From positions 186,001-250,000 of the IMG/VR virus record IMGVR_UViG_3300047320_000285: 64,000 nt of DNA; one strand, given 5' to 3'. The notes beneath the pieces were generated by a model. It was not told the DNA's origin. It saw nothing but the letters and a program-made list of their open reading frames with translations, and did not search any database. Position numbers and translations under genes: made by a program. This document shows positions 24,005-35,581 of this stretch, piece by piece (the stretch's first letter is position 1; the number at the start of each line of letters is the position of its first letter).

Positions 24005-26257
24005 ATGATTCTCTTTGCTAACGATTGGGACAAATACCCGACCGCGGACGTCGATATGACGACCAAGAACGAGTCGTTTATTCGACTCGCGGCAGTGTAC
24101 AAAAAGATGGGGATCAAGAACCACGCGTTTCCGCTGGCCTTGATTAACCAGAACCTCAAGGGGATTGATCCGTTTGCCCCGGACTTGTCGCAACAAGAAA
24201 TCCTGATGATCACGATGGAGTGTTTCCATAATCCGTGGTACTACTTCCGTGAGATTGCCCGCGCACCGGCGGGGTCTGGTCAGGAGGCGGTTCGGGTGGA
24301 AGGCAACCGAGCGAATTTGGCCTTGTGGTGGAGTTTCTTTAACCACGTGATGTTCATGCTAATCCAGCCGCGTCAGACCGGTAAGTCGTTCTCGACCGAT
24401 ACGCTGATGGTGTACCTGATGGTGATCAAGTGCATGAACACCGGGATTAACCTGCTCACGAAGGATGACAAACTGCGCCGGGAAAATATCGACCGCATCA
24501 AGAACATCATGACTGAGCTGCCCGACTACATGCAGCTCAGGACGAGCGACGACGTCAACAACGGCGAAGAGATTACCATCAAGGCGTTGGGTAATAAGTA
24601 CAACACCCACGTGCCGCAAGCGTCGGAAAAGCTCGCCCACAACAAGGGGCGTGGTATTACCACGCCGGTTGTCCATATCGACGAGCCGCCGTTCCAGCGC
24701 CACATTGCCGTCGCCGTGAAAGCGATGTTGGCGGCCATGGGTGCCGCCACAGAACGCGCGGCCGAAGCCGGGGCACCGTATGGGGTGATCATGACCACCA
24801 CCGCCGGGATGAAGGACGATGTGGATGGTAAGTGGGTGTACGAAACGCTGGTGCAGGATTCGGCACCGTGGAACGAACGTTTCTTCGACTGCAAGGATGC
24901 GGAAGAACTCGAATGGCTGGTGCGTAAGACCAGTCCGGGCAAGAAGTTCCAGATCAACGGGACCTTCGATCACCGCCAGTTGGGCAAGTCCGACGAATGG
25001 CTGCGCAAGAAGATTGAAGCGGCGCTGCAGGACGGGCTGACGGCAGAGCGCGATTACCTGAATATCTGGACCTCAGGTACGGAACGTTCACCGTTTGATC
25101 CCCATACCACCGAACGCATTGCGAACGCCAAGTGTGAACCGTTGCACCACCAGATCTTCCCCGAAGGCTATATCTTCCGCTGGCATCTGCCGGAGGAGCA
25201 AGTCGTCAACTACATGAAGTTCAACAAGACGGTGCTCGGGGTGGACTCCTCGGATGCGATGGGTCGAGACGAAATCTGTCTGGTGTTGACGGATGTGGTT
25301 ACCGGTGAGGTAATCGGGACCGGGGCGTTTAACGAAACCAACCTGTTTACGTTCTCGACGTGGCTCGCCCACTTCCTGATTGAGTTCAAGAACGTGACGA
25401 TGATTCCGGAGCGTCACTCGTCGATGGTGATGATTTTGGATCACCTGTGTATCATGTTGCCGCAACATGGTGAAGACCCGTTCAAGCGGATCTTTAACTG
25501 GGTGGTGCAGGATCAGAACGACAGTGTCTCGAATACCGAGAAGTATCGGGAGATCAAGCAACCGCTGTCACGGCGCGATGCACAGTTCCATGCCGAGCGT
25601 AAGGGGGCGTTGGGCTGGCGGACCAGCGGCACAGGACGCACCGCCCGGAGCAACCTGTATTCGGTGGTCCTGATGATGGCGGCGAAGCGGGCTGGCCACA
25701 AAATCAAGGACCCCCAACTCGTGGGGCAGTTGCTCGGGCTGGTCAACAAGAATGGCCGGATCGACCACGAGGAGGGCAGTCACGATGACATGGTGATCGC
25801 ATGGCTCCTGACGCACTGGTTCCTGATGCAGGGTAAGTATCTGACTCACTACGGTATCGAAGCCGGCACTGCGCTGGCCGGTTTGAACGTGAAGAAGGAG
25901 GAGAGTCCGCAGGAAATGCGTATGCGCTTCGAGCAGCAGGAGATCCGCGATCAGATCACGGAACTCTACGAGAAGCTCATGAACGAGGAAGATGAAAATG
26001 TGGCGGAGCGCATTGAAGCGAAGCTGCGTTCCTTGGATCGACGCATTGTCGTGGAAGAAGGCGAGCTGTATGCGTTTGATGACCTGATTCGGGAAGCCAA
26101 GAACGCTCGACGCACGCGGGCGAGAAATAGCGACTTCCGGGGCGGTGGGCAGTATCAGCCGCATTACCGGGAGGAGCAATGGCAGCGCGCAGGCAGCTAC
26201 GCGATGGCGCCGCCTAACCACGGCGGCTATGGCGGGTTTCAGACCCACTACGGCTAG
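24005..26257 (+). CDS. terL: Terminase large subunit
   Basis: Walker A PRQTGKS, Walker B VHIDE, nuclease motifs LGVDSS and HDDMVIA. Confidence 0.92.
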   Translation: MILFANDWDKYPTADVDMTTKNESFIRLAAVYKKMGIKNHAFPLALINQNLKGIDPFAPDLSQQEILMITMECFHNPWYYFREIARAPAGSGQEAVRVEGNRANLALWWSFFNHVMFMLIQPRQTGKSFSTDTLMVYLMVIKCMNTGINLLTKDDKLRRENIDRIKNIMTELPDYMQLRTSDDVNNGEEITIKALGNKYNTHVPQASEKLAHNKGRGITTPVVHIDEPPFQRHIAVAVKAMLAAMGAATERAAEAGAPYGVIMTTTAGMKDDVDGKWVYETLVQDSAPWNERFFDCKDAEELEWLVRKTSPGKKFQINGTFDHRQLGKSDEWLRKKIEAALQDGLTAERDYLNIWTSGTERSPFDPHTTERIANAKCEPLHHQIFPEGYIFRWHLPEEQVVNYMKFNKTVLGVDSSDAMGRDEICLVLTDVVTGEVIGTGAFNETNLFTFSTWLAHFLIEFKNVTMIPERHSSMVMILDHLCIMLPQHGEDPFKRIFNWVVQDQNDSVSNTEKYREIKQPLSRRDAQFHAERKGALGWRTSGTGRTARSNLYSVVLMMAAKRAGHKIKDPQLVGQLLGLVNKNGRIDHEEGSHDDMVIAWLLTHWFLMQGKYLTHYGIEAGTALAGLNVKKEESPQEMRMRFEQQEIRDQITELYEKLMNEEDENVAERIEAKLRSLDRRIVVEEGELYAFDDLIREAKNARRTRARNSDFRGGGQYQPHYREEQWQRAGSYAMAPPNHGGYGGFQTHYG

Positions 26258-28141: not shown

Positions 28142-29074
28142 TTATTCGGTTTGACCGACACCCGGTTGGGCGCCGCCTTCTTGGCCGCTCACGTGATCCG
28201 TGTTGCCGGCTTCACCCGTACCGTCCGCGCCTTCGTTCTGCGGCTGGCAGATACCCGGCATCGACGGATCGATCGGTTCACCGGACGCGTTTTCCGGATT
28301 GAGCGGGGTCTCCAGCGACGACACGTATTCCTCGAGCGAGCCGAAGTACTTGCCGCCCATGGCCGCCACTGCCAAACGCAGCGCTTCCTTGGCGACCTTC
28401 TTCTTCTTGCCCTTGGCTTTCTTCTTGCCCGCACCGAATTGCTTGGCGAACATCGCCATCTTCTTCACATGGGGGTCGTCAGACGCGAGGCCCTTGGCAA
28501 TGTCAGCCGGCGTGATCTTCTCGCCTTCCTTCTTACCGAGCCACTTGTGAAAGCCGCCCTTCTTGACCTTGATGTCCTTCTTGTCCTTGCCAGCCGCTTC
28601 GAGCGCGAGCGACTCTTCGGACTCGAGCATCGACTCGATGGCCACCACTTCTTCGGCGTCCAGATCGACAATGTCGTCCTGCACTTCACCGGTGCCGTCT
28701 TCGTTCTGGGGCGCAGACGCATCGGCAATCACCACAAACTCGCCCGCCTTGGAGTCTTCCATGTCGTTGACGACGTCAACCACCGTGTCCGGCTCGATAT
28801 CGGTTTCGCTCACGGCGTAGATCTCGACGCCGTTCTTGACGTCCGGATCATCCGAGTTGTTGACGGCATTGATGAGTTTGCTCATCACCGTGACGTCCTG
28901 AGCCTGCGATTCGAGCGCAGCCCCATCCGTCGTCGCTTCACCCGTGACGGGATCGGTCTTGGCGTAGGCTACGTTCAACGCGTTCGTCATCGCTTGGCCG
29001 AGCGGCCCCTTCATCACGATGGCTTCAGGTTCGCGCTCCATGCCCTCGAGGGCGATTCGCATTACGTTGCGCAT
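28142..29074 (-). CDS. Putative internal head protein with multiple A-X-E protease sites
   Basis: 310 aa; ALE/AIE motifs (IALEG, AALES, VAIES, LALEA), acidic segments and a Lys-rich block. Confidence 0.55.
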   Translation of the reverse strand: MRNVMRIALEGMEREPEAIVMKGPLGQAMTNALNVAYAKTDPVTGEATTDGAALESQAQDVTVMSKLINAVNNSDDPDVKNGVEIYAVSETDIEPDTVVDVVNDMEDSKAGEFVVIADASAPQNEDGTGEVQDDIVDLDAEEVVAIESMLESEESLALEAAGKDKKDIKVKKGGFHKWLGKKEGEKITPADIAKGLASDDPHVKKMAMFAKQFGAGKKKAKGKKKKVAKEALRLAVAAMGGKYFGSLEEYVSSLETPLNPENASGEPIDPSMPGICQPQNEGADGTGEAGNTDHVSGQEGGAQPGVGQTE

Positions 29075-29139
29075 TGTTCCTTCCTCACTGTTTGTTGGGT
29101 CTTCGGCTTATCCGCATCGGTAGACCAGCTGACCACCTA

Positions 29140-29760
29140 AAGGTGTCACACTATAGCGGTCATATAGAAAAGTTACACAGTCTCTGCTCGGGCCGCTGTT
29201 GCCCCCTTCCCCTCGCCGCCCTCCCGGCCGCAAACCTTAATACGTCCGCTCGCCGCGCGGCTGTAAGTCGCGAAGTTCAATGTAGCAGAAGGCTTCCAAG
29301 ACTTCTGCGATAGATTGATACAAAACCGGTTTGTGTGTTGTAGGTTTTTCCCTTTACCTACCGGTAGGTCTCGATTTTACCGTAGGTACCTGCTCGATAG
29401 GGAGAGTTCCCCCAGAACTCTCCCGGCTATCCTAGCTAAGCTGGTTTGTTACAATTTGTTACCAAATTGCAGTTTTTGGGTTTTTAGAGTAAGATAATCT
29501 TTACCTCAGTATTACGGAGTAATACTGAGGATAGATGAAATATTTAACTTCATTCATACCTGATGTAGAAATAATAAAAAAATAATCTTAGAGAAAAACG
29601 CGTGCCGCAGGCAGTTTTTTGAGAATTTCGGGAAAAAGTCTGTTACATCTTGTTACAATTGTAAGGAATGAGGGCAGAGGTCTGCCTATTTATTAGGCAA
29701 CTGAGACGATACAGGGTCCTATCAGTTTTTACACCAAGCGATCATGCTCTGAGTCACGCA
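29140..29760. promoter_or_regulatory. Long non-coding region with palindromes, repeats and an AT-rich tract (candidate origin or control region)
   Basis: No credible ORF; several perfect inverted repeats, four TGTTAC copies, and an A/T-rich tract at about 29535-29600. Confidence 0.5.
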
Positions 29761-29768
29761 TGATGTGA

Positions 29769-30056
29769 ATGAACAATGAGGAAGCGAACGTGATGTTGAT
29801 GAACTTACTGGGTCGGCTCTGCGGTCGTCCCTTAACTAAACAAGAACGACTCGAGCGTTTGCAGCAGAGTCTGATTACGACCATCCGTCAGGGTCGCGAT
29901 GAGGACGATGCCACCGCAGTAGCACTGGCGATTCGGGCGGATGCGATTCTGAAACAGGATCTACCGTTCGATCTGCGCTGTCAGCAGCTGCATGACGTGG
30001 TGGTTACGCATGCAGCCCAAAAGCTCCTCACGCGCCTCGAGTCTTATCACCACTAA
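29769..30056 (+). CDS. Hypothetical protein (95 aa)
   Basis: ORF with helical amphipathic composition; start uncertain. Confidence 0.5.
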   Translation: MNNEEANVMLMNLLGRLCGRPLTKQERLERLQQSLITTIRQGRDEDDATAVALAIRADAILKQDLPFDLRCQQLHDVVVTHAAQKLLTRLESYHH

Positions 30057-30063
30057 GAACAAC

Positions 30064-30375
30064 ATGACACAACAAGAACCATCATCGGCGGGGTTAGGCT
30101 TTGAAGGTCACTTGCAACGCATGGCGAAGCTGAAAGCCGAACGTGAAAGTTTACAGCGTCAGCTCATGCTTCTGAACGTGACCATTGCCATTGTCAGGGC
30201 CAAAGGTAGTGAGCGAGACTGGCCGGAGGACTTTCCACATGAGAACGGTGTGTACAACAACTGGTGCTGCTCATGCAAGAAGAACTTCCTCGGCTACAAA
30301 CGTCGCGTCATCTGCAAGCTTTGTTCAGGGGATCCACAGACTGGCTCCGTCGTAACGGAATCGGTCTCACTTTAA
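30064..30375 (+). CDS. Small Zn-finger-like protein
   Basis: DWPEDFPHENGVY..WCCSC...F.G.KRRVICKLC with two CxxC pairs. Confidence 0.6.
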   Translation: MTQQEPSSAGLGFEGHLQRMAKLKAERESLQRQLMLLNVTIAIVRAKGSERDWPEDFPHENGVYNNWCCSCKKNFLGYKRRVICKLCSGDPQTGSVVTESVSL

Positions 30376-30421
30376 GCGCACTGGTCGTCTTGGCGGGTGC
30401 GCTCTGGTCGAAATTAGGGAA

Positions 30422-30604
30422 ATGAATATGTTGCACATCTACCAAGGCGGCTCGGCCGCACACTCGTCGGTGGTGTTATCACCGGCAGATTTTCAAATGC
30501 GCGAACGTCCTGAAACCAAGTGGTTCCCGGAGTTGACGGTGAAGATTACCGTAGCGGGTCGTCAGTTCACCATTCTGGAACGTGGGGAGCGGCGCCGACA
30601 ATGA
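30422..30604 (+). CDS. Small hypothetical protein (60 aa)
   Basis: AGGGA SD; its stop overlaps the next start (ATGA). Confidence 0.45.
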   Translation: MNMLHIYQGGSAAHSSVVLSPADFQMRERPETKWFPELTVKITVAGRQFTILERGERRRQ

Positions 30605-30900
30605 GTGAGGAACCGCGCAAGATTCTGATCGTCGGGGCAGGGGCAGGCTTGGGTCGAGAACTGGCTAAACTGATCATGCGTGACGAACGCTTGCGCGGTC
30701 AGGTGGTCTTAGTGGATAAGCTCCCCGAGGACCACCACTCAGCTCATGAACCCGTGGATCTGGACCAACTCATGGATCGCTTACGGGGTGAGCTGCCAGA
30801 GTTGCGTGCTCCCGTGGTTCAGCGTCGCGAACACAACGCGTTACTGCCGTACCATGGCAAGTCCAAGCATGACCGGCAAAGGAAATGGTGGAACCGATGA
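30601..30900 (+). CDS. Hypothetical protein with a Rossmann-like GxGxxG N-terminus, ending RKWWNR
   Basis: GGGGAG SD; KILIVGAGAGLGRELA; too short for a full dehydrogenase. Confidence 0.55.
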   Translation: MSEEPRKILIVGAGAGLGRELAKLIMRDERLRGQVVLVDKLPEDHHSAHEPVDLDQLMDRLRGELPELRAPVVQRREHNALLPYHGKSKHDRQRKWWNR

Positions 30901-31187
30901 CACCTGATGCTCGTGAGTATCATTTCATGGTACCTGATGAACTTCCGGAGTTTGCCAAGACGGATCTGCTCATCAACGGGTGCCGTCTAGGAAAGGACTA
31001 CTATCATGACCCCTCTGTCATGGGGGACCGTCCTAGTTTCTCTGAGCTTGCTGCTCAGCTACGCGCTGCTAATGAGGAGCCACAGCAAGCGGAGAGTGGT
31101 AACGAAGCAGGACCAGATCGAAACGGCAAGAAGCCCCGCACCCCCAAGCTACCTAACATCGCCCGCCAAAAATGGTGGAACCGTTAA
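30897..31187 (+). CDS. Hypothetical protein ending QKWWNR
   Basis: ATGA overlap with the previous stop codon; GGTGGA SD. Confidence 0.55.
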   Translation: MTPDAREYHFMVPDELPEFAKTDLLINGCRLGKDYYHDPSVMGDRPSFSELAAQLRAANEEPQQAESGNEAGPDRNGKKPRTPKLPNIARQKWWNR

Positions 31188-31200
31188 GGAGATTCCAGAC

Positions 31201-31563
31201 GTGCCTCAACAACAAGACCCCGCCGCTGTAGCCCGGAATAATTATACCGCCATCGAGATGATTGAGACCAAGGCGTATCTCGATTCCAATGAGAACCTGA
31301 CCTTTCGAATAGCGGTGACTCAGAAGGACACCGAGATCATGCTCTGGAGCGAGCGGATCAAGATGTTGATGATGGCGTACCCGCCGGAAGCGACGTTTAT
31401 GAAAGCGTCGGAGACGACGGACTTGCTGGACTGTAGTCGCAAGGTGGCGCAGATGAAAGAGCTGCGCATGTGGGATTTTGTCCTGTCCTACCAAACGGAA
31501 TTGGTTCTGAAATTGATGGCTGCGGCCCGTAACATCGAAGCACGCGCCCGAAAAGATTCATAG
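31201..31563 (+). CDS. Hypothetical protein (about 120 aa)
   Basis: AGGAG SD at 31186-31190 and GTG start; terminator follows. Confidence 0.6.
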   Translation: MPQQQDPAAVARNNYTAIEMIETKAYLDSNENLTFRIAVTQKDTEIMLWSERIKMLMMAYPPEATFMKASETTDLLDCSRKVAQMKELRMWDFVLSYQTELVLKLMAAARNIEARARKDS

Positions 31564-31571
31564 CCTGAGAG

Positions 31572-31609
31572 GGCATAAGCGGCTGGGTGCTACCCCAGCC
31601 TTTATGCCG
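31572..31609. terminator. Bidirectional terminator
   Basis: GGCATAA-GC-GGCTGGG...CCCAGCC-TTTATGCCG between convergent genes. Confidence 0.7.
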
Positions 31610-32490: not shown

Positions 32491-33120
32491 ATGGCGACGA
32501 AGCATTATTTCCTCTCGTTCGAAGAACGGGTGGACGAAGTAACGAAGCGAGGATGGCCAGAGGAGTACGCGCAGCTCTGGTGGAAGAAATACTACGGACA
32601 TCTAACAAGCGCGGTCTATCGCGGTACCAGCTCTGAGCTAACGTTTGGAGACTATCTGGATAAGATCCTTGAGGCAGGGATTAAGATCCCAGAGCAAGTC
32701 TCAAAATACGCAGCTGGGTATGTGCTTGGTCGCTACACTGACGAGGGTTCTTATACGGTCGATAGCTGTCGGTTCATTACGCAGCTGGAGAATACTCACG
32801 AGGCAATCAAGAATGGTCGTTGGGAGAATGTCTGGAAGATCGTAGGCGATGTTCGTCGCGGTCAGACTAAAGAGACGCTTGCTTTTCTCGCGAAGATGGC
32901 TGAAACCAAACGAGGCCGAACTGCAGAAACCCATGCAGGCATAGCGATTCAGGCTGACAAGATTGCTCGTGACTTTGCTTTCCAAGCACCTGATGGCACA
33001 GTCTATCGTGGTCGAAACCTGAAGAAGTTTTGTCGCGAGCACAATCTGAATTCCGGTAACATGAACCAATTGTTGCTTGGTAGGAGGGACTCAGTCAAAG
33101 GCTGGAAACGTGTGCCGTAG
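32491..33120 (+). mobile_element. Free-standing HNH-like (beta-beta-alpha-Me) homing endonuclease with NUMOD-type repeats and C-terminal HTH
   Basis: LGRYTDEGSYTVDSCRF..EN nuclease-like motif, basic MAETKRGR repeats, and APDG..Y...L..FCREHNL....KGW; more AT-rich than its neighbours. Confidence 0.75.
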
Positions 33121-33208
33121 ATTTTTTCAACCCTATATTACCCAACTGTAATAGCACCAGCAATCACGTTGATGCGTTACCATCCCTTACATTTCCTTTA
33201 TACTGGAG
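33121..33208 (+). promoter_or_regulatory. Early (vRNAP-type) promoter and leader
   Basis: T-run then exact TATATTAC (33134-33141); leader homologous to 12001-12070. Confidence 0.7.
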
Positions 33209-34576: not shown

Positions 34577-35581
34577 ATGTCCGACGTTCTCACCCAAGCT
34601 AAGCGCAATGTGCTCATCATTGGCTGCGGCGGTGGCGGTACCAACATCTCGTATAACCTCGAGAAGCTGCGCAACAGCAACGAACTCGGTTTTGCTACGG
34701 CCGAGATCGTCTACGTCGACGCGTCGCGCTCGAACATGCGTGCTGACATTCCGGCCAAAGCGGTCTACCTGATCGACGGCCTCGACGGCTCCGGCAAGGT
34801 GCGCTCGGAGAATCACAGCGAAATCGGTCTGCGGGTGAAAGACATCCTGCAGCGTTTCCGTCCGGGCGATCTGGTGATCGTGATTTCGACGCTGGCAGGT
34901 GGCACCGGTTCGGTGATCAGCCCGTTGCTGGTCAAGGAACTGCTGATGCGCGGGATTCCGACTATCGTGATCGGCGTGGGTGACACCACCACCCGGCTCG
35001 ACACCGAGAACACACTCAAGTCGATCCAGTCGTTCGAGCACATCGCGAAGAAGGCCGACGTGCCGGTGGTGATGCAGTATCTGGAAAACAGCGAACGCAA
35101 CTCGCGCGCGGAAATCGACAAGCAGGTCAAGCAGATGGTCGGCTCGCTGTGCTCGTTGTTCTCGGGCGAAAACCGCGAACTGGACAGCAAAGACCTGTTC
35201 AACTTCCTGAACTTCAGCAACCCGAAGGTCACGACGTATCAGGCACAACTGGCGACGCTGCATCTGCTGGGTCGCGACGACGATTTCAACGGCTTGGGCA
35301 ATATCATCTCGGTGGCCTCGCTGCTGTCCGAAGGTGAAGCGTTCAGCCTGCCGGTGCGTCCGGAATACGCGACCTACGGTTATCAGCCGCGTGGTGTGAA
35401 CGAAACGGTGGCCAAGGGTGCGCCCTACCACTTCGTGATCGCCGACGGCGTGGTGCCGGAAGTGGTGAGCGAGCTGGAGAAAATCATCGGCACGCTCAAC
35501 GAGCAGCAAGAAGCTCGTCTGTCGCGTCGATCCATTCTGGGTTCGGCCGCTCGTCCTGACGAGTCCGGTCTGATTCTGTAA
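34577..35581 (+). CDS. phuZ: Phage tubulin PhuZ
   Basis: IGCGGGGTNI, DGSGKVRSEN and tubulin signature AGGTGSVISP; start at MSDVLT after AAGGAG. Confidence 0.95.
   Translation: MSDVLTQAKRNVLIIGCGGGGTNISYNLEKLRNSNELGFATAEIVYVDASRSNMRADIPAKAVYLIDGLDGSGKVRSENHSEIGLRVKDILQRFRPGDLVIVISTLAGGTGSVISPLLVKELLMRGIPTIVIGVGDTTTRLDTENTLKSIQSFEHIAKKADVPVVMQYLENSERNSRAEIDKQVKQMVGSLCSLFSGENRELDSKDLFNFLNFSNPKVTTYQAQLATLHLLGRDDDFNGLGNIISVASLLSEGEAFSLPVRPEYATYGYQPRGVNETVAKGAPYHFVIADGVVPEVVSELEKIIGTLNEQQEARLSRRSILGSAARPDESGLIL

What the first reader, a model, noticed from the sequence alone, without database searches (positions are those of the whole stretch)
29440..29665. Phased TGTTAC repeat pairs flanking an AT-rich tract: origin-like architecture
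Seen: TGTTAC at 29447 and 29457, and again at 29641 and 29651. Each pair is spaced exactly 10 nt, about one helical turn, and the two clusters share an exact 11-mer, TTGTTACAATT (29446-56, 29650-60). The right cluster contains the palindrome TTACAATTGTAA (29653-64). Between them lies the most AT-rich stretch I noticed in the window (about 29535-29600). Established: iteron pairs plus a DNA-unwinding element are typical of replication origins. Inference: candidate replication origin, packaging site or shell-attachment site for this phage; I know of no defined origin for this group.
Basis: partly seen in the sequence, partly recalled or inferred. Interest (0 to 1): 0.68.

Follow-up and report, generated by a model that had tools for sequence, protein, structure and literature searches.

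The report
Conserved phased-repeat control region, jumbo phage
The TGTTAC repeats and the extreme AT-rich tract are real and conserved in related nucleus-forming jumbo phages, but they look more like a protein-binding array tied to a nearby promoter plus a short non-coding unit than a proven replication origin.

Summary
TGTTAC-N4-TGTTAC occurs twice in the window (0.09 expected). The tandem motif occurs nowhere else in the 253.7-kb genome. 29491-29590 is the most AT-rich 100 bp of the whole genome.

The site lies in a 694-718-bp non-coding spacer. On its left is a leftward head-protein operon, on its right a rightward operon of small fast-evolving genes. The phage is a PhuZ-encoding chimallivirus related to Burkholderia phage FLC9.

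Eight relatives (51-85% aa identity in the neighbouring gene) share one module order: GC hairpin, perfect palindrome with a 3-nt loop, AT tract, small hairpin with a + strand T-run, then a TGTWACAnTT array.
- The right array is present in 9 of 9 genomes, in 2-4 copies, 10 bp apart.
- In the five closest genomes its last copy sits 71-73 bp before a predicted TTTYTAC-N10-CATG promoter.
- The left pair exists in only two genomes, so "pairs flanking a DUE" is not conserved.
- In L138 the array lies about 310 bp from the AT tract.
- The AT tract is nearly invariant in sequence and terminator-bounded.
- No skew switch was found. Read data could not be obtained.

Best reading (confidence about 0.4): upstream binding sites for an unidentified DNA-binding protein, beside a short non-coding transcription unit. 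An origin or packaging site is not excluded (about 0.2).

The parts
28142..29074 (-). 310-aa gene, first gene of the leftward operon. It is followed by a 413-aa homologue of the phiKZ gp32 head protein and a 133-aa gene, and the operon is convergent with TerL (24005-26257).
   Evidence: ORF with the RBS AGGAAGGA. Homologues are 51-85% identical in relatives and 36% identical to FLC9 gp22. The 413-aa protein matches PHIKZ032.
29075..29166 (-). Conserved 5' UTR of the 310-aa gene, with a late-type TATATG box at 29161-29166 on the - strand. The predicted start is the G opposite 29161.
   Evidence: 86-92% nucleotide identity in five relatives (alignment). TATG with G as +1 is the phiKZ late promoter rule (PMC4666361). 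The assignment here is an inference.
29236..29399 (.). Conserved non-coding block with several hairpins. It includes 29285-29308, which covaries (AU to GC), and the palindrome GCCGCGCGGC. The strand is unresolved.
   Evidence: 83-89% identity. RNAalifold on either strand gives 9-11 pairs with compensatory changes. All six frames carry stops, read from the sequence.
29400..29424 (.). GC hairpin A, GGGAGAGTTC-cccca-GAACTCTCCC.
   Evidence: Four different stem versions in relatives are all perfectly Watson-Crick: GGCAGAGACT, GGTAGGGTTC, GGGAGGGGTC, and GGGGGAGGG in FLC9. In FLC9 and L004 a T-run follows the hairpin on the - strand.
29444..29462 (+). Left TGTTAC pair, GTTTGTTACAATTTGTTAC. It is accessory and not conserved.
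   Evidence: Present only in the window and L132; degenerate remnants remain in L131, L135, L136 and L140.
29504..29530 (.). Perfect palindrome with 12-bp arms and a 3-nt loop (gga). It has the lowest GC content of the 18 long perfect hairpins in the genome.
   Evidence: DNA fold gives -11.2 kcal/mol, z = -7.1. It is 100% identical in the five closest relatives. In L137, L133 and L138 it is replaced by different perfect palindromes of 11, 13 and 15 bp, each with a 3-nt loop, at the same place in the module.
29531..29599 (.). AT tract (18% GC over 29531-29590). It contains the invariant CTTCATTCATA and AGAAATAATAAAAAAATAATCTT, an 11-bp direct repeat of AAATAAT, and a TATG on the - strand (29558-29555).
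   Evidence: No ORF is conserved on either strand, judged by reading the alignment.
29600..29622 (+). Small hairpin followed by T6, with A5 upstream, so it is bidirectional in form. It is read as the terminator that closes the AT-tract unit.
   Evidence: One stem pair covaries (UA in 3 sequences, GC in 3). The + strand T-run is kept as T5-T6 in all six; the - strand run decays in L136 and L140.
29638..29666 (+). Right array: TGTTACA at 29641 and 29651, unit TGTTACAnTT, plus a degenerate third copy TGTAAGG at 29660. The core TGTWACA is a near-palindrome.
   Evidence: Present in 9 of 9 genomes with 2-4 copies. Spacing is 10 bp in 17 of 20 intervals and 9 bp in 3. Spacer bases vary. The tandem motif is unique in the genome.
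29683..29699 (+). Hairpin C, TGCCTA-tttat-TAGGCA, between the array and the promoter.
   Evidence: The structure is kept while the stems change: TGCTGCCTA/TAGGCAGCA in L131, AGGTTGCCT/AGGCAACCT in L132. L140 has a U-G pair only possible on the + strand.
29726..29746 (+). Predicted phage-RNAP promoter TTTTTAC-N10-CATG for the rightward operon, with the predicted start at G 29746.
   Evidence: TTT[TC]TAC-N9-11-YATG occurs 6 times in the genome. All six lie between called genes and point at the next called gene; five are 43-80 nt upstream of it, and one is 841 nt upstream, which is probably a gap in my gene calls. Shuffled intergenic DNA gives 0.15. Both boxes are kept with a variable spacer in four relatives; L140 has CATC in place of CATG. 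The box is always 71-73 bp after the last array copy. It resembles the phiKZ middle and late promoter logic.
29793..30056 (+). First gene of the rightward operon (87 aa from the ATG behind the RBS GAGGAAG). It is a small helical protein. The operon runs to about 31563.
   Evidence: The model has pLDDT 78 and four helices. It has no match to a DNA-binding fold. Nucleotide identity to relatives is below 70%.

Best explanation
The finding covers two neighbouring but separable parts of a conserved non-coding control region. The region lies in the divergent spacer between a late head-protein operon (leftward) and an operon of small, fast-evolving genes (rightward) in a nucleus-forming jumbo phage.

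(1) The TGTTACAnTT copies are tandem binding sites for a sequence-specific DNA-binding protein. The protein is most likely phage-encoded and has not been identified. Each TGTWACA core is nearly two-fold symmetric, and the strict 10-bp spacing puts all copies on one face of the helix. This is the arrangement used by proteins that bind cooperatively side by side, such as OmpR/PhoB/ArcA-type winged helices and MetJ/ParR-type ribbon-helix-helix arrays. The last copy sits a fixed 71-73 bp (about 7 helical turns) upstream of a predicted phage-polymerase promoter, TTTTTAC-N10-CATG. The array is therefore read as an upstream regulatory site for that promoter.

(2) The AT tract and the palindrome before it form a self-contained non-coding unit bounded by hairpins. 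It is most likely transcribed as a short non-coding RNA. Its strand is not settled, although a + strand terminator is the better-conserved signal. It may also carry the promoter of that RNA.

Shown: the existence of the elements, their uniqueness, phasing, conservation, covariation, and the spacing to the promoter box.
Inferred: protein binding, promoter activity, and transcription of the AT tract.
For: - The motif pair is non-random and unique in the genome.
- The right array is in 9 of 9 clade genomes, with copy number 2-4, a 10-bp period and varying spacer bases.
- Extra copies are added on the distal side. The distance from the last copy to the TAC-N10-CATG box stays at 71-73 bp in five genomes although the DNA between them differs.
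- That box belongs to a six-member promoter-like class. All six lie between called genes and point at the next called gene; five are 43-80 nt upstream of it. Chance expectation is 0.15. The class resembles the phiKZ middle and late promoter rules.
- In L138 the array stays about 100 bp from a TAC-N10-TATG box while lying about 310 bp from the palindrome and AT unit.
- The small genes right of the array have no homologue in FLC9 or RP12, which also lack the array.
- AT tract: the sequence is 93-100% conserved against 81-85% for the flanking genes. It has no conserved ORF. It is closed by a hairpin with one covarying pair and a conserved + strand T5-T6.
- The same layout of hairpin, AT-rich stretch, hairpin is seen in FLC9, L004, L006 and RP12, with terminator-type tails.
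- Intergenic sRNAs are documented in chimallivirus 201phi2-1 (PMC11512511).
Against:
- The binding protein is unknown. The first downstream gene product is a plain helical bundle with no DNA-binding fold hit.
- No neighbouring protein carries a recognised DNA-binding domain. The only Trans_reg_C hit in the genome is sub-threshold and contains a stop.
- The palindromes are perfectly Watson-Crick in four independent versions (51 bp with no G-U pair or mismatch). That fits a DNA-level role such as a cruciform or a dimer site at least as well as an RNA hairpin.
- Genome-wide extreme AT-richness at the syntenic spot in two or three lineages is what selection for easy unwinding would produce.
- No complementary target for a putative sRNA was found in the phage genome.
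- The promoter class is predicted from sequence only.
- In L132 and L133 no such promoter box was found after the array.
Confidence: 0.4

Rival explanations
1. Replication origin. The TGTWACA copies are iterons for a phage initiator. The AT tract is the unwinding element and the palindrome is an auxiliary site, as in the mirror-image layout of ori-lambda (iterons, AT-rich region, palindrome). Alternatively, a transcript through the AT tract primes synthesis, as at T7 or T4 origins.
For: - It is a unique site in the genome.
- It holds the most AT-rich DNA of the whole genome. The syntenic spacer is also the AT-richest 60 bp in FLC9 and the sixth lowest in RP12.
- The palindromes are perfectly Watson-Crick in four versions.
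- The module is insulated by terminator-like hairpins.
- No origin is defined for this phage family, and Ori-Finder fails on giant chimalliviruses (PMC12390700).
Against: - The left repeat pair is not conserved.
- The array is separable from the AT tract (L138) and keeps a fixed distance to a promoter instead.
- The units are only 10 bp long and present in only 2-4 copies.
- No initiator, helicase-loader or Rep-like gene lies nearby.
- There is no DnaA-box cluster.
- No skew switch appears in cumulative or codon-third-position skew.
- The AT tract is conserved in exact sequence, and a terminator lies between it and the array.
- The syntenic phiKZ spacer is only 90 bp.
Confidence: 0.2
2. The repeats are themselves tandem promoter elements for a phage RNA polymerase (TTAC-type boxes as in phiKZ early TATATTAC and middle AAanTTACc). 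Alternatively, the whole stretch from about 29244 to 29622 is one long structured non-coding RNA, and the array starts the next transcript.
For: - phiKZ middle promoters carry AAanTTACc, and the second left-cluster copy reads TTTGTTACC.
- The array sits directly after a terminator and before hairpin C, a typical mRNA 5' structure.
- Conservation begins exactly at TTAATAYG, which reads TATG in L131 and L136, after a variable GC-rich stretch. G-U pairs in the conserved block favour the + strand.
Against: - TGTWACA is used nowhere else in the genome as an upstream element.
- TTAC is not enriched in upstream regions beyond base composition (88 seen, 82 expected).
- The genome's early-type promoter matrix scores the spacer below zero.
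- No YATG follows the repeats at the class spacing, judged by reading.
- Strict helical phasing and variable copy number are unusual for core promoters.
Confidence: 0.15
3. Packaging initiation (pac) or another DNA-anchoring site, for example for terminase or the nuclear shell. Phased short repeats beside bent AT-rich DNA would be recognised by a small terminase-like protein, as at P1 pac or SPP1 pacL/pacR.
For: It is a unique site with phased repeats. It lies 2.8 kb from the TerL gene and next to head-protein genes. The window's two clusters flanking a central region resemble P1 pac.
Against: - The two-cluster layout is not conserved.
- The assembly is circular-type (127-bp end overlap), with no end at this site. 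The relatives' long contigs do not break here.
- Giant chimalliviruses studied with PhageTerm show headful packaging without defined termini (PMC12390700).
- Nothing links the shell to DNA sequence.
Confidence: 0.08
4. Centromere-like site for the PhuZ tubulin, analogous to tubC/TubR or parC/ParR. Phased iterons upstream of a small adaptor gene would capture the filament.
For: Phased iteron clusters around a promoter are the parC and tubC layout. PhuZ lies 5 kb downstream on the same strand.
Against: PhuZ (34577-35581) is separated from the array by a convergent terminator, an opposite-strand gene and its own early-type promoter at 33135. No TubR-like or ParR-like fold was found in the first downstream protein. 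No DNA-segregation role of PhuZ is known.
Confidence: 0.03

Closest known systems
Tandem direct-repeat operator or activator sites (OmpR/PhoB/ArcA winged-helix boxes; MetJ met-box arrays)
   Same: Short units of 7-10 bp repeated head to tail with a 10-11-bp (8 bp for MetJ) period. Copy number varies between 2 and 5. The sites lie upstream of a promoter and all fall on one helix face.
   Different: No binding protein has been identified. The phage genome is thought to be shielded from host regulators inside the phage nucleus, and its polymerases are non-canonical. The site is about 90-105 bp upstream of the predicted start.
ori-lambda and plasmid iteron origins
   Same: Direct repeats plus an adjacent AT-rich region plus a palindrome; a single site per genome.
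   Different: The units are 10 bp, not 17-22 bp. There is no adjacent initiator gene. A terminator lies between the repeats and the AT tract, the AT tract is fixed in sequence, the array can sit 310 bp away, and there is no skew signal.
T7 primary origin and T4 oriF/oriG (promoter plus AT-rich unwinding element)
   Same: An AT-rich tract that appears to be transcribed; repeated promoter-like boxes upstream in the window and L132.
   Different: The upstream boxes are missing in most relatives. No matching promoter was found in front of the tract.
P1 pac site
   Same: Clusters of phased hexamers on both sides of a central region, near packaging genes.
   Different: Only one cluster is conserved; there is no evidence of termini.
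phiKZ middle and late promoters (AAanTTACc; TATG with G = +1) and chimallivirus intergenic sRNAs (201phi2-1)
   Same: The same family of phages. The TAC box plus YATG start logic is recovered here as TTTYTAC-N10-YATG. Short terminator-bounded intergenic units exist in 201phi2-1.
   Different: The TGTWACA array is not part of those motifs. The spacing of the TAC box differs (about -14 to -17 here, about -24 in phiKZ). No transcript data exist for this clade.

Membership tests
Iteron-type replication origin | Array of direct repeats bound by a replicon-encoded initiator | tested here: inconclusive
   The array exists and is conserved. However, the units are 10 bp in 2-4 copies, and binding cannot be tested with these tools.
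Iteron-type replication origin | AT-rich unwinding element directly adjoining the iterons | tested here: inconclusive
   They adjoin in the window, with about 40 bp and a terminator hairpin between them. They are about 310 bp apart in L138.
Iteron-type replication origin | Initiator or helicase-loader gene at or next to the origin | tested here: not met
   Neighbouring proteins have no Rep, O, DnaA or helicase-loader domains in Pfam or PHROGs. The first downstream protein is a plain helical bundle.
Iteron-type replication origin | Switch of strand compositional skew at the site | tested here: not met
   Cumulative GC and AT skew follow gene orientation only. GC3 skew of + strand genes is flat across the genome. 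This is a weak criterion for phages.
Iteron-type replication origin | Replication starts here (marker frequency, 2D gels) | not testable with these tools
pac site (P1/SPP1 type) | Repeat clusters on both sides of the cleavage region, conserved among relatives | tested here: not met
   The left cluster is present in only 2 of 9 genomes.
pac site (P1/SPP1 type) | Virion DNA termini map at or just downstream of the site | not testable with these tools
   No reads are available. The assemblies are circular-type, with no contig end at the site.
Partition centromere (parC/tubC type) | Iterons immediately upstream of an adaptor-NTPase operon | tested here: not met
   PhuZ is 5 kb away behind a terminator, an opposite-strand gene and its own promoter.
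Chimallivirus early promoter (extended ATATTACC class of this genome) | Match to the roughly 45-bp consensus GTGnTnTAAAn3TTTCAnCnAnATATTACC | tested here: not met
   The best matrix score in the spacer is -3.6; true sites score 43-63.
TAC-box/YATG phage promoter class | TTTYTAC, 9-11 nt, YATG, in sense orientation upstream of a gene | tested here: met
   29726-29746 is one of six genomic instances, all between called genes (0.15 expected by chance). It is conserved in relatives with a variable spacer. This applies to the neighbouring promoter, not to the TGTTAC array itself.
Terminator-ended small RNA gene | No ORF, conserved sequence, 3' hairpin with U-run and compensatory change | tested here: met
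   The hairpin is weak (5 bp), and in the window it carries one mismatch.
Terminator-ended small RNA gene | A detectable transcript with defined ends | not testable with these tools
   No RNA data. No Rfam family matches.

The most novel reading that the evidence does not exclude
The palindrome, AT tract and phased array together form the first defined cis-acting DNA site of a nucleus-forming jumbo phage. It would be a replication origin, possibly primed by the short transcript through the AT tract, or the site where packaging or genome anchoring begins. It would be recognised by a clade-specific protein encoded in the adjacent fast-evolving operon.
Probability: 0.2. Interest if true: 0.8.

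Novelty: new member of a known kind. Interest (0 to 1): 0.45.

Why it matters
Nucleus-forming jumbo phages transcribe and replicate inside a protein shell with their own non-canonical polymerases. To my knowledge, almost nothing is known about their sequence-specific DNA-binding regulators, and no origin or packaging signal has been defined. The one paper read here that tried found that origin prediction fails on giant chimalliviruses.

This locus gives a concrete, conserved and unique DNA target, 2-4 copies of TGTTACAnTT, with which to fish for such a protein. It also gives a predicted promoter class and a candidate non-coding unit that can be tested directly in cultured relatives. If the element turned out to be an origin or a pac site, it would open genetic engineering and replication studies for this family.

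Tried and rejected
- Near-identical phage records: none found.
- IMG/VR and JGI scans with neighbouring proteins found only distant relatives. The word-index protein search was what found the useful relatives.
- An exact-pattern scan of viral contigs with the repeat pair gave only scattered chance hits.
- The 27-nt palindrome occurs in no other viral or prokaryotic record.
- Rfam, tRNA and sigma-70 scans found nothing meaningful.
- The palindrome as a pair of early promoters (GTATTAC against ATATTAC): rejected by the promoter matrix.
- TTAC as a general promoter core: not enriched.
- The first downstream protein as the array binder: helical bundle, no DNA-binding fold match. This gives no support and is not evidence against.
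- The 60-aa operon protein does not look like a ribbon-helix-helix, judged by eye.
- OmpR-type domain in the phage: one sub-threshold hit containing a stop.
- The 413-aa neighbour as a PHIKZ014 homologue: no; it matches PHIKZ032.
- sRNA target search inside the phage genome: only chance-level matches.
- nhmmer with the module against FLC9, RP12, phiKZ loci and distant relatives: no sequence homology, only shared layout.
- The GC-rich variable stretch 29176-29235 as a clean terminator hairpin: not convincing.
- DnaA boxes: a single 8/9 match at 29108 and no cluster.

Full report
**Context.** The window is bases 186,001-250,000 of a 253,740-bp IMG/VR phage record with 57% GC and a 127-bp end overlap.
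- TerL (24005-26257) is most similar to Burkholderia phage FLC9 (56% aa) and Ralstonia phage RP12 (49%), then to phiKZ-like phages.
- A PhuZ-type tubulin lies at 34577-35581 (also seen in the relatives' loci).
- The phage is therefore a chimallivirus-type jumbo phage.
- The finding lies in a long non-coding spacer. On the left, a 310-aa gene on the - strand starts at 29074. It heads an operon that also holds a homologue of the phiKZ gp32 head protein. On the right, the first + strand gene starts at 29769, or more likely at 29793 behind the RBS GAGGAAG.

**Observation.**
- The phased pair TGTTAC-N4-TGTTAC occurs twice in 64 kb against 0.09 expected.
- The shared 11-mer has no other copy in the genome.
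- No other place in the genome comes within two mismatches of the tandem motif.
- All other single TGTWACA copies lie inside genes.
- 29491-29590 is the lowest-GC 100 bp of the whole genome: 25%, with 32% the next lowest.

**Relatives.** IMG/VR and JGI pattern scans found only distant relatives. The word-index protein search found homologues of the 310-aa protein at 51-85% identity. Their contigs were fetched as L131-L141. All carry a 640-1,700-bp spacer at the same place.
- The spacer is strongly conserved in the five closest genomes. Against 81-85% nucleotide identity for the flanking genes, the palindrome is 100% identical and the AT tract about 93%. The first rightward gene is below 70%.
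- Across all nine genomes the order of parts is the same: a GC hairpin (four covarying versions, all perfectly paired); a long perfect palindrome with a 3-nt loop (four unrelated sequences with 11-15-bp arms); the most AT-rich 60 bp of the spacer; a small hairpin; then the TGTWACA array.
- FLC9, two FLC9-like IMG/VR contigs and RP12 lack the array. They keep a hairpin, AT-rich stretch, hairpin unit with terminator-type tails at the syntenic spot.
- That spot holds the lowest-GC 60-bp window of the FLC9 genome and the sixth lowest of RP12.
- In phiKZ the syntenic spacer (gp32|gp33) is only 90 bp.

**The repeats.**
- The right cluster is present in 9 of 9 genomes with 2, 3 or 4 copies of the unit TGTTACAnTT. 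Spacing is 10 bp in 17 of 20 intervals and 9 bp in three related ones. The spacer bases vary.
- The core TGTWACA is nearly its own reverse complement, so L137's TGTAACA copies and one copy in L135 are single-base variants.
- The left cluster exists only in the window and L132. The other genomes show decayed remnants. The picture of pairs flanking the AT tract is therefore not a conserved feature.
- In L138 the array lies about 310 bp from the palindrome and AT unit. The two parts are separable.

**Promoter landscape.** K-mer enrichment in upstream regions gave three signal classes.
- An extended early-like motif, GTGnTnTAAAn3TTTCAnCnAnATATTACC. There are 10 strong copies and about 8 weaker ones, all on the + strand. 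It recalls the phiKZ early consensus.
- About 50 GC hairpins followed by TTATGCC, often symmetric. They are also found between convergent genes, so they are at least terminators, and they carry the late-type TATG (PMC4666361).
- ACACTTCCTTTATACT just before ribosome-binding sites.

None of these matches the repeats, the palindrome or the AT tract.

A fourth class, TTTYTAC-N9-11-YATG, occurs six times in the genome. All six lie between called genes and point at the next called gene; five are 43-80 nt upstream of it. Shuffled intergenic DNA gives 0.15.
- One member is at 29726-29746.
- Its two boxes are kept in L131, L135 and L136 while the 10-nt spacer differs. L140 has CATC in place of CATG.
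- In all five closest genomes the box begins 71-73 bp after the last array copy, whatever the copy number and although the DNA between them differs.
- L137 and L138 have a similar box 103-111 bp after the array. None was found in L132 or L133.
- This fixed spacing is the main reason to tie the array to the rightward promoter rather than to the AT tract.

**The AT tract.**
- It carries no conserved ORF on either strand (read).
- It is close to invariant in sequence.
- It ends at a 5-bp hairpin in which one pair covaries (UA in three sequences, GC in three). The + strand T5-T6 run is kept in all six sequences, whereas the - strand run decays in two.
- It also holds an invariant TATG on the - strand behind a T-rich stretch (read). 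In FLC9 and L004 the left GC hairpin is a canonical terminator for leftward transcripts.
- Transcription of the tract therefore seems likely, but its direction is not settled.
- The conserved block 29236-29399 to the left folds into several hairpins with compensatory changes on either strand.
- No Rfam family matches. No complementary target was found in the phage genome.

**Tests of the origin idea.**
- Cumulative GC and AT skew follow gene orientation and show no turn at 215.5 kb.
- Third-position GC skew of + strand genes is flat along the genome.
- There is no DnaA-box cluster.
- No neighbouring protein has an initiator-like or any recognised DNA-binding domain.
- The first downstream protein models as a four-helix bundle with no informative structural match.
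- The only OmpR-type hit in the genome is sub-threshold.
- Published work finds no defined origin or termini for giant chimalliviruses (PMC12390700).

**Verdict.** The feature is real, unique in its genome and conserved. The best-supported reading has two parts. The TGTTACAnTT array is a helically phased binding site for an unidentified DNA-binding protein, placed a fixed seven turns upstream of a predicted phage-polymerase promoter for a clade-specific operon. The palindrome and AT tract form a separate non-coding unit bounded by hairpins, probably a short transcript.

Confidence in this reading is about 0.4. An origin (about 0.2) or a packaging or anchoring site (about 0.08) is not excluded. 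The perfect palindromes and the recurrent genome-minimum GC content argue in their favour. The non-conserved left pair, the separable parts, the sequence-level conservation, the intervening terminator, the flat skew and the missing initiator argue against.

Noticed in passing
whole genome; in the window e.g. 33103-33160 (ATATTAC at 33135), and 12016: An extended early-type promoter motif of about 45 bp, GTGnTnTAAAn3TTTCAnCnAnATATTACC. There are 10 strong and about 8 weaker copies, all on the + strand and 50-90 nt upstream of genes, including the operon that ends in PhuZ. It is related to the phiKZ early TATATTAC consensus.
   Followed up: partly
whole genome, about 50 sites; in the window e.g. 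31578-31609 and 28095: GC hairpins followed by (C)TTATGCC, often symmetric as GGCATAA-hairpin-TTATGCC. They also occur between convergent genes, so they act at least as terminators while carrying the late-type TATG. The same unit is seen in FLC9, L004 and RP12.
   Followed up: partly
whole genome, about 13 sites; in the window 33198: The motif ACACTTCCTTTATACT lies 16-27 nt before start codons, often about 40 nt downstream of an early-type promoter. Its function is unknown; it could be a second promoter or a 5' UTR element.
   Followed up: no
whole genome, 6 sites; in the window 29726-29746, 12589 and 46070: A new promoter-like class, TTTYTAC-N9-11-YATG. All six lie between called genes and point at the next called gene; five are 43-80 nt upstream of it, and one is 841 nt upstream, probably a gap in my gene calls. 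Chance expectation is 0.15.
   Followed up: yes
window 29236-29399: A conserved non-coding block with several hairpins showing compensatory changes, and the invariant palindrome GCCGCGCGGC. It may be part of a longer structured RNA that starts at TTAATAYG (about 29237-29244).
   Followed up: partly
window 29176-29235: A GC-rich stretch that varies freely among relatives. It is G-rich on the - strand and has four G-runs in the window only. It sits between two highly conserved blocks.
   Followed up: partly
window 29569-29586: An 11-bp-period direct repeat, AAATAAT-aaaa-AAATAAT, inside the AT tract. It is invariant in the six closest genomes.
   Followed up: no
L010 4203-4224 (FLC9) and L011 4553-4580 (RP12): The syntenic spacers of FLC9 and RP12 carry their own short repeats near the rightward gene. 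FLC9 has TTCAAAnATAT twice with an 11-bp period. RP12 has CTTGCAAGCA twice. This suggests lineage-specific binding sites at the same place.
   Followed up: no
window 29793-31563: The five or six small genes right of the array evolve much faster than their surroundings and mostly have no homologue in FLC9 or RP12. One 57-60-aa protein (30422-30604) is conserved across the clade.
   Followed up: partly
L138 3923-4000: The L138 relative has an inserted alternating (GC)n inverted repeat, GCGCGCGCGC-n8-GCGCGCGCGC, between the palindrome/AT unit and the array.
   Followed up: no
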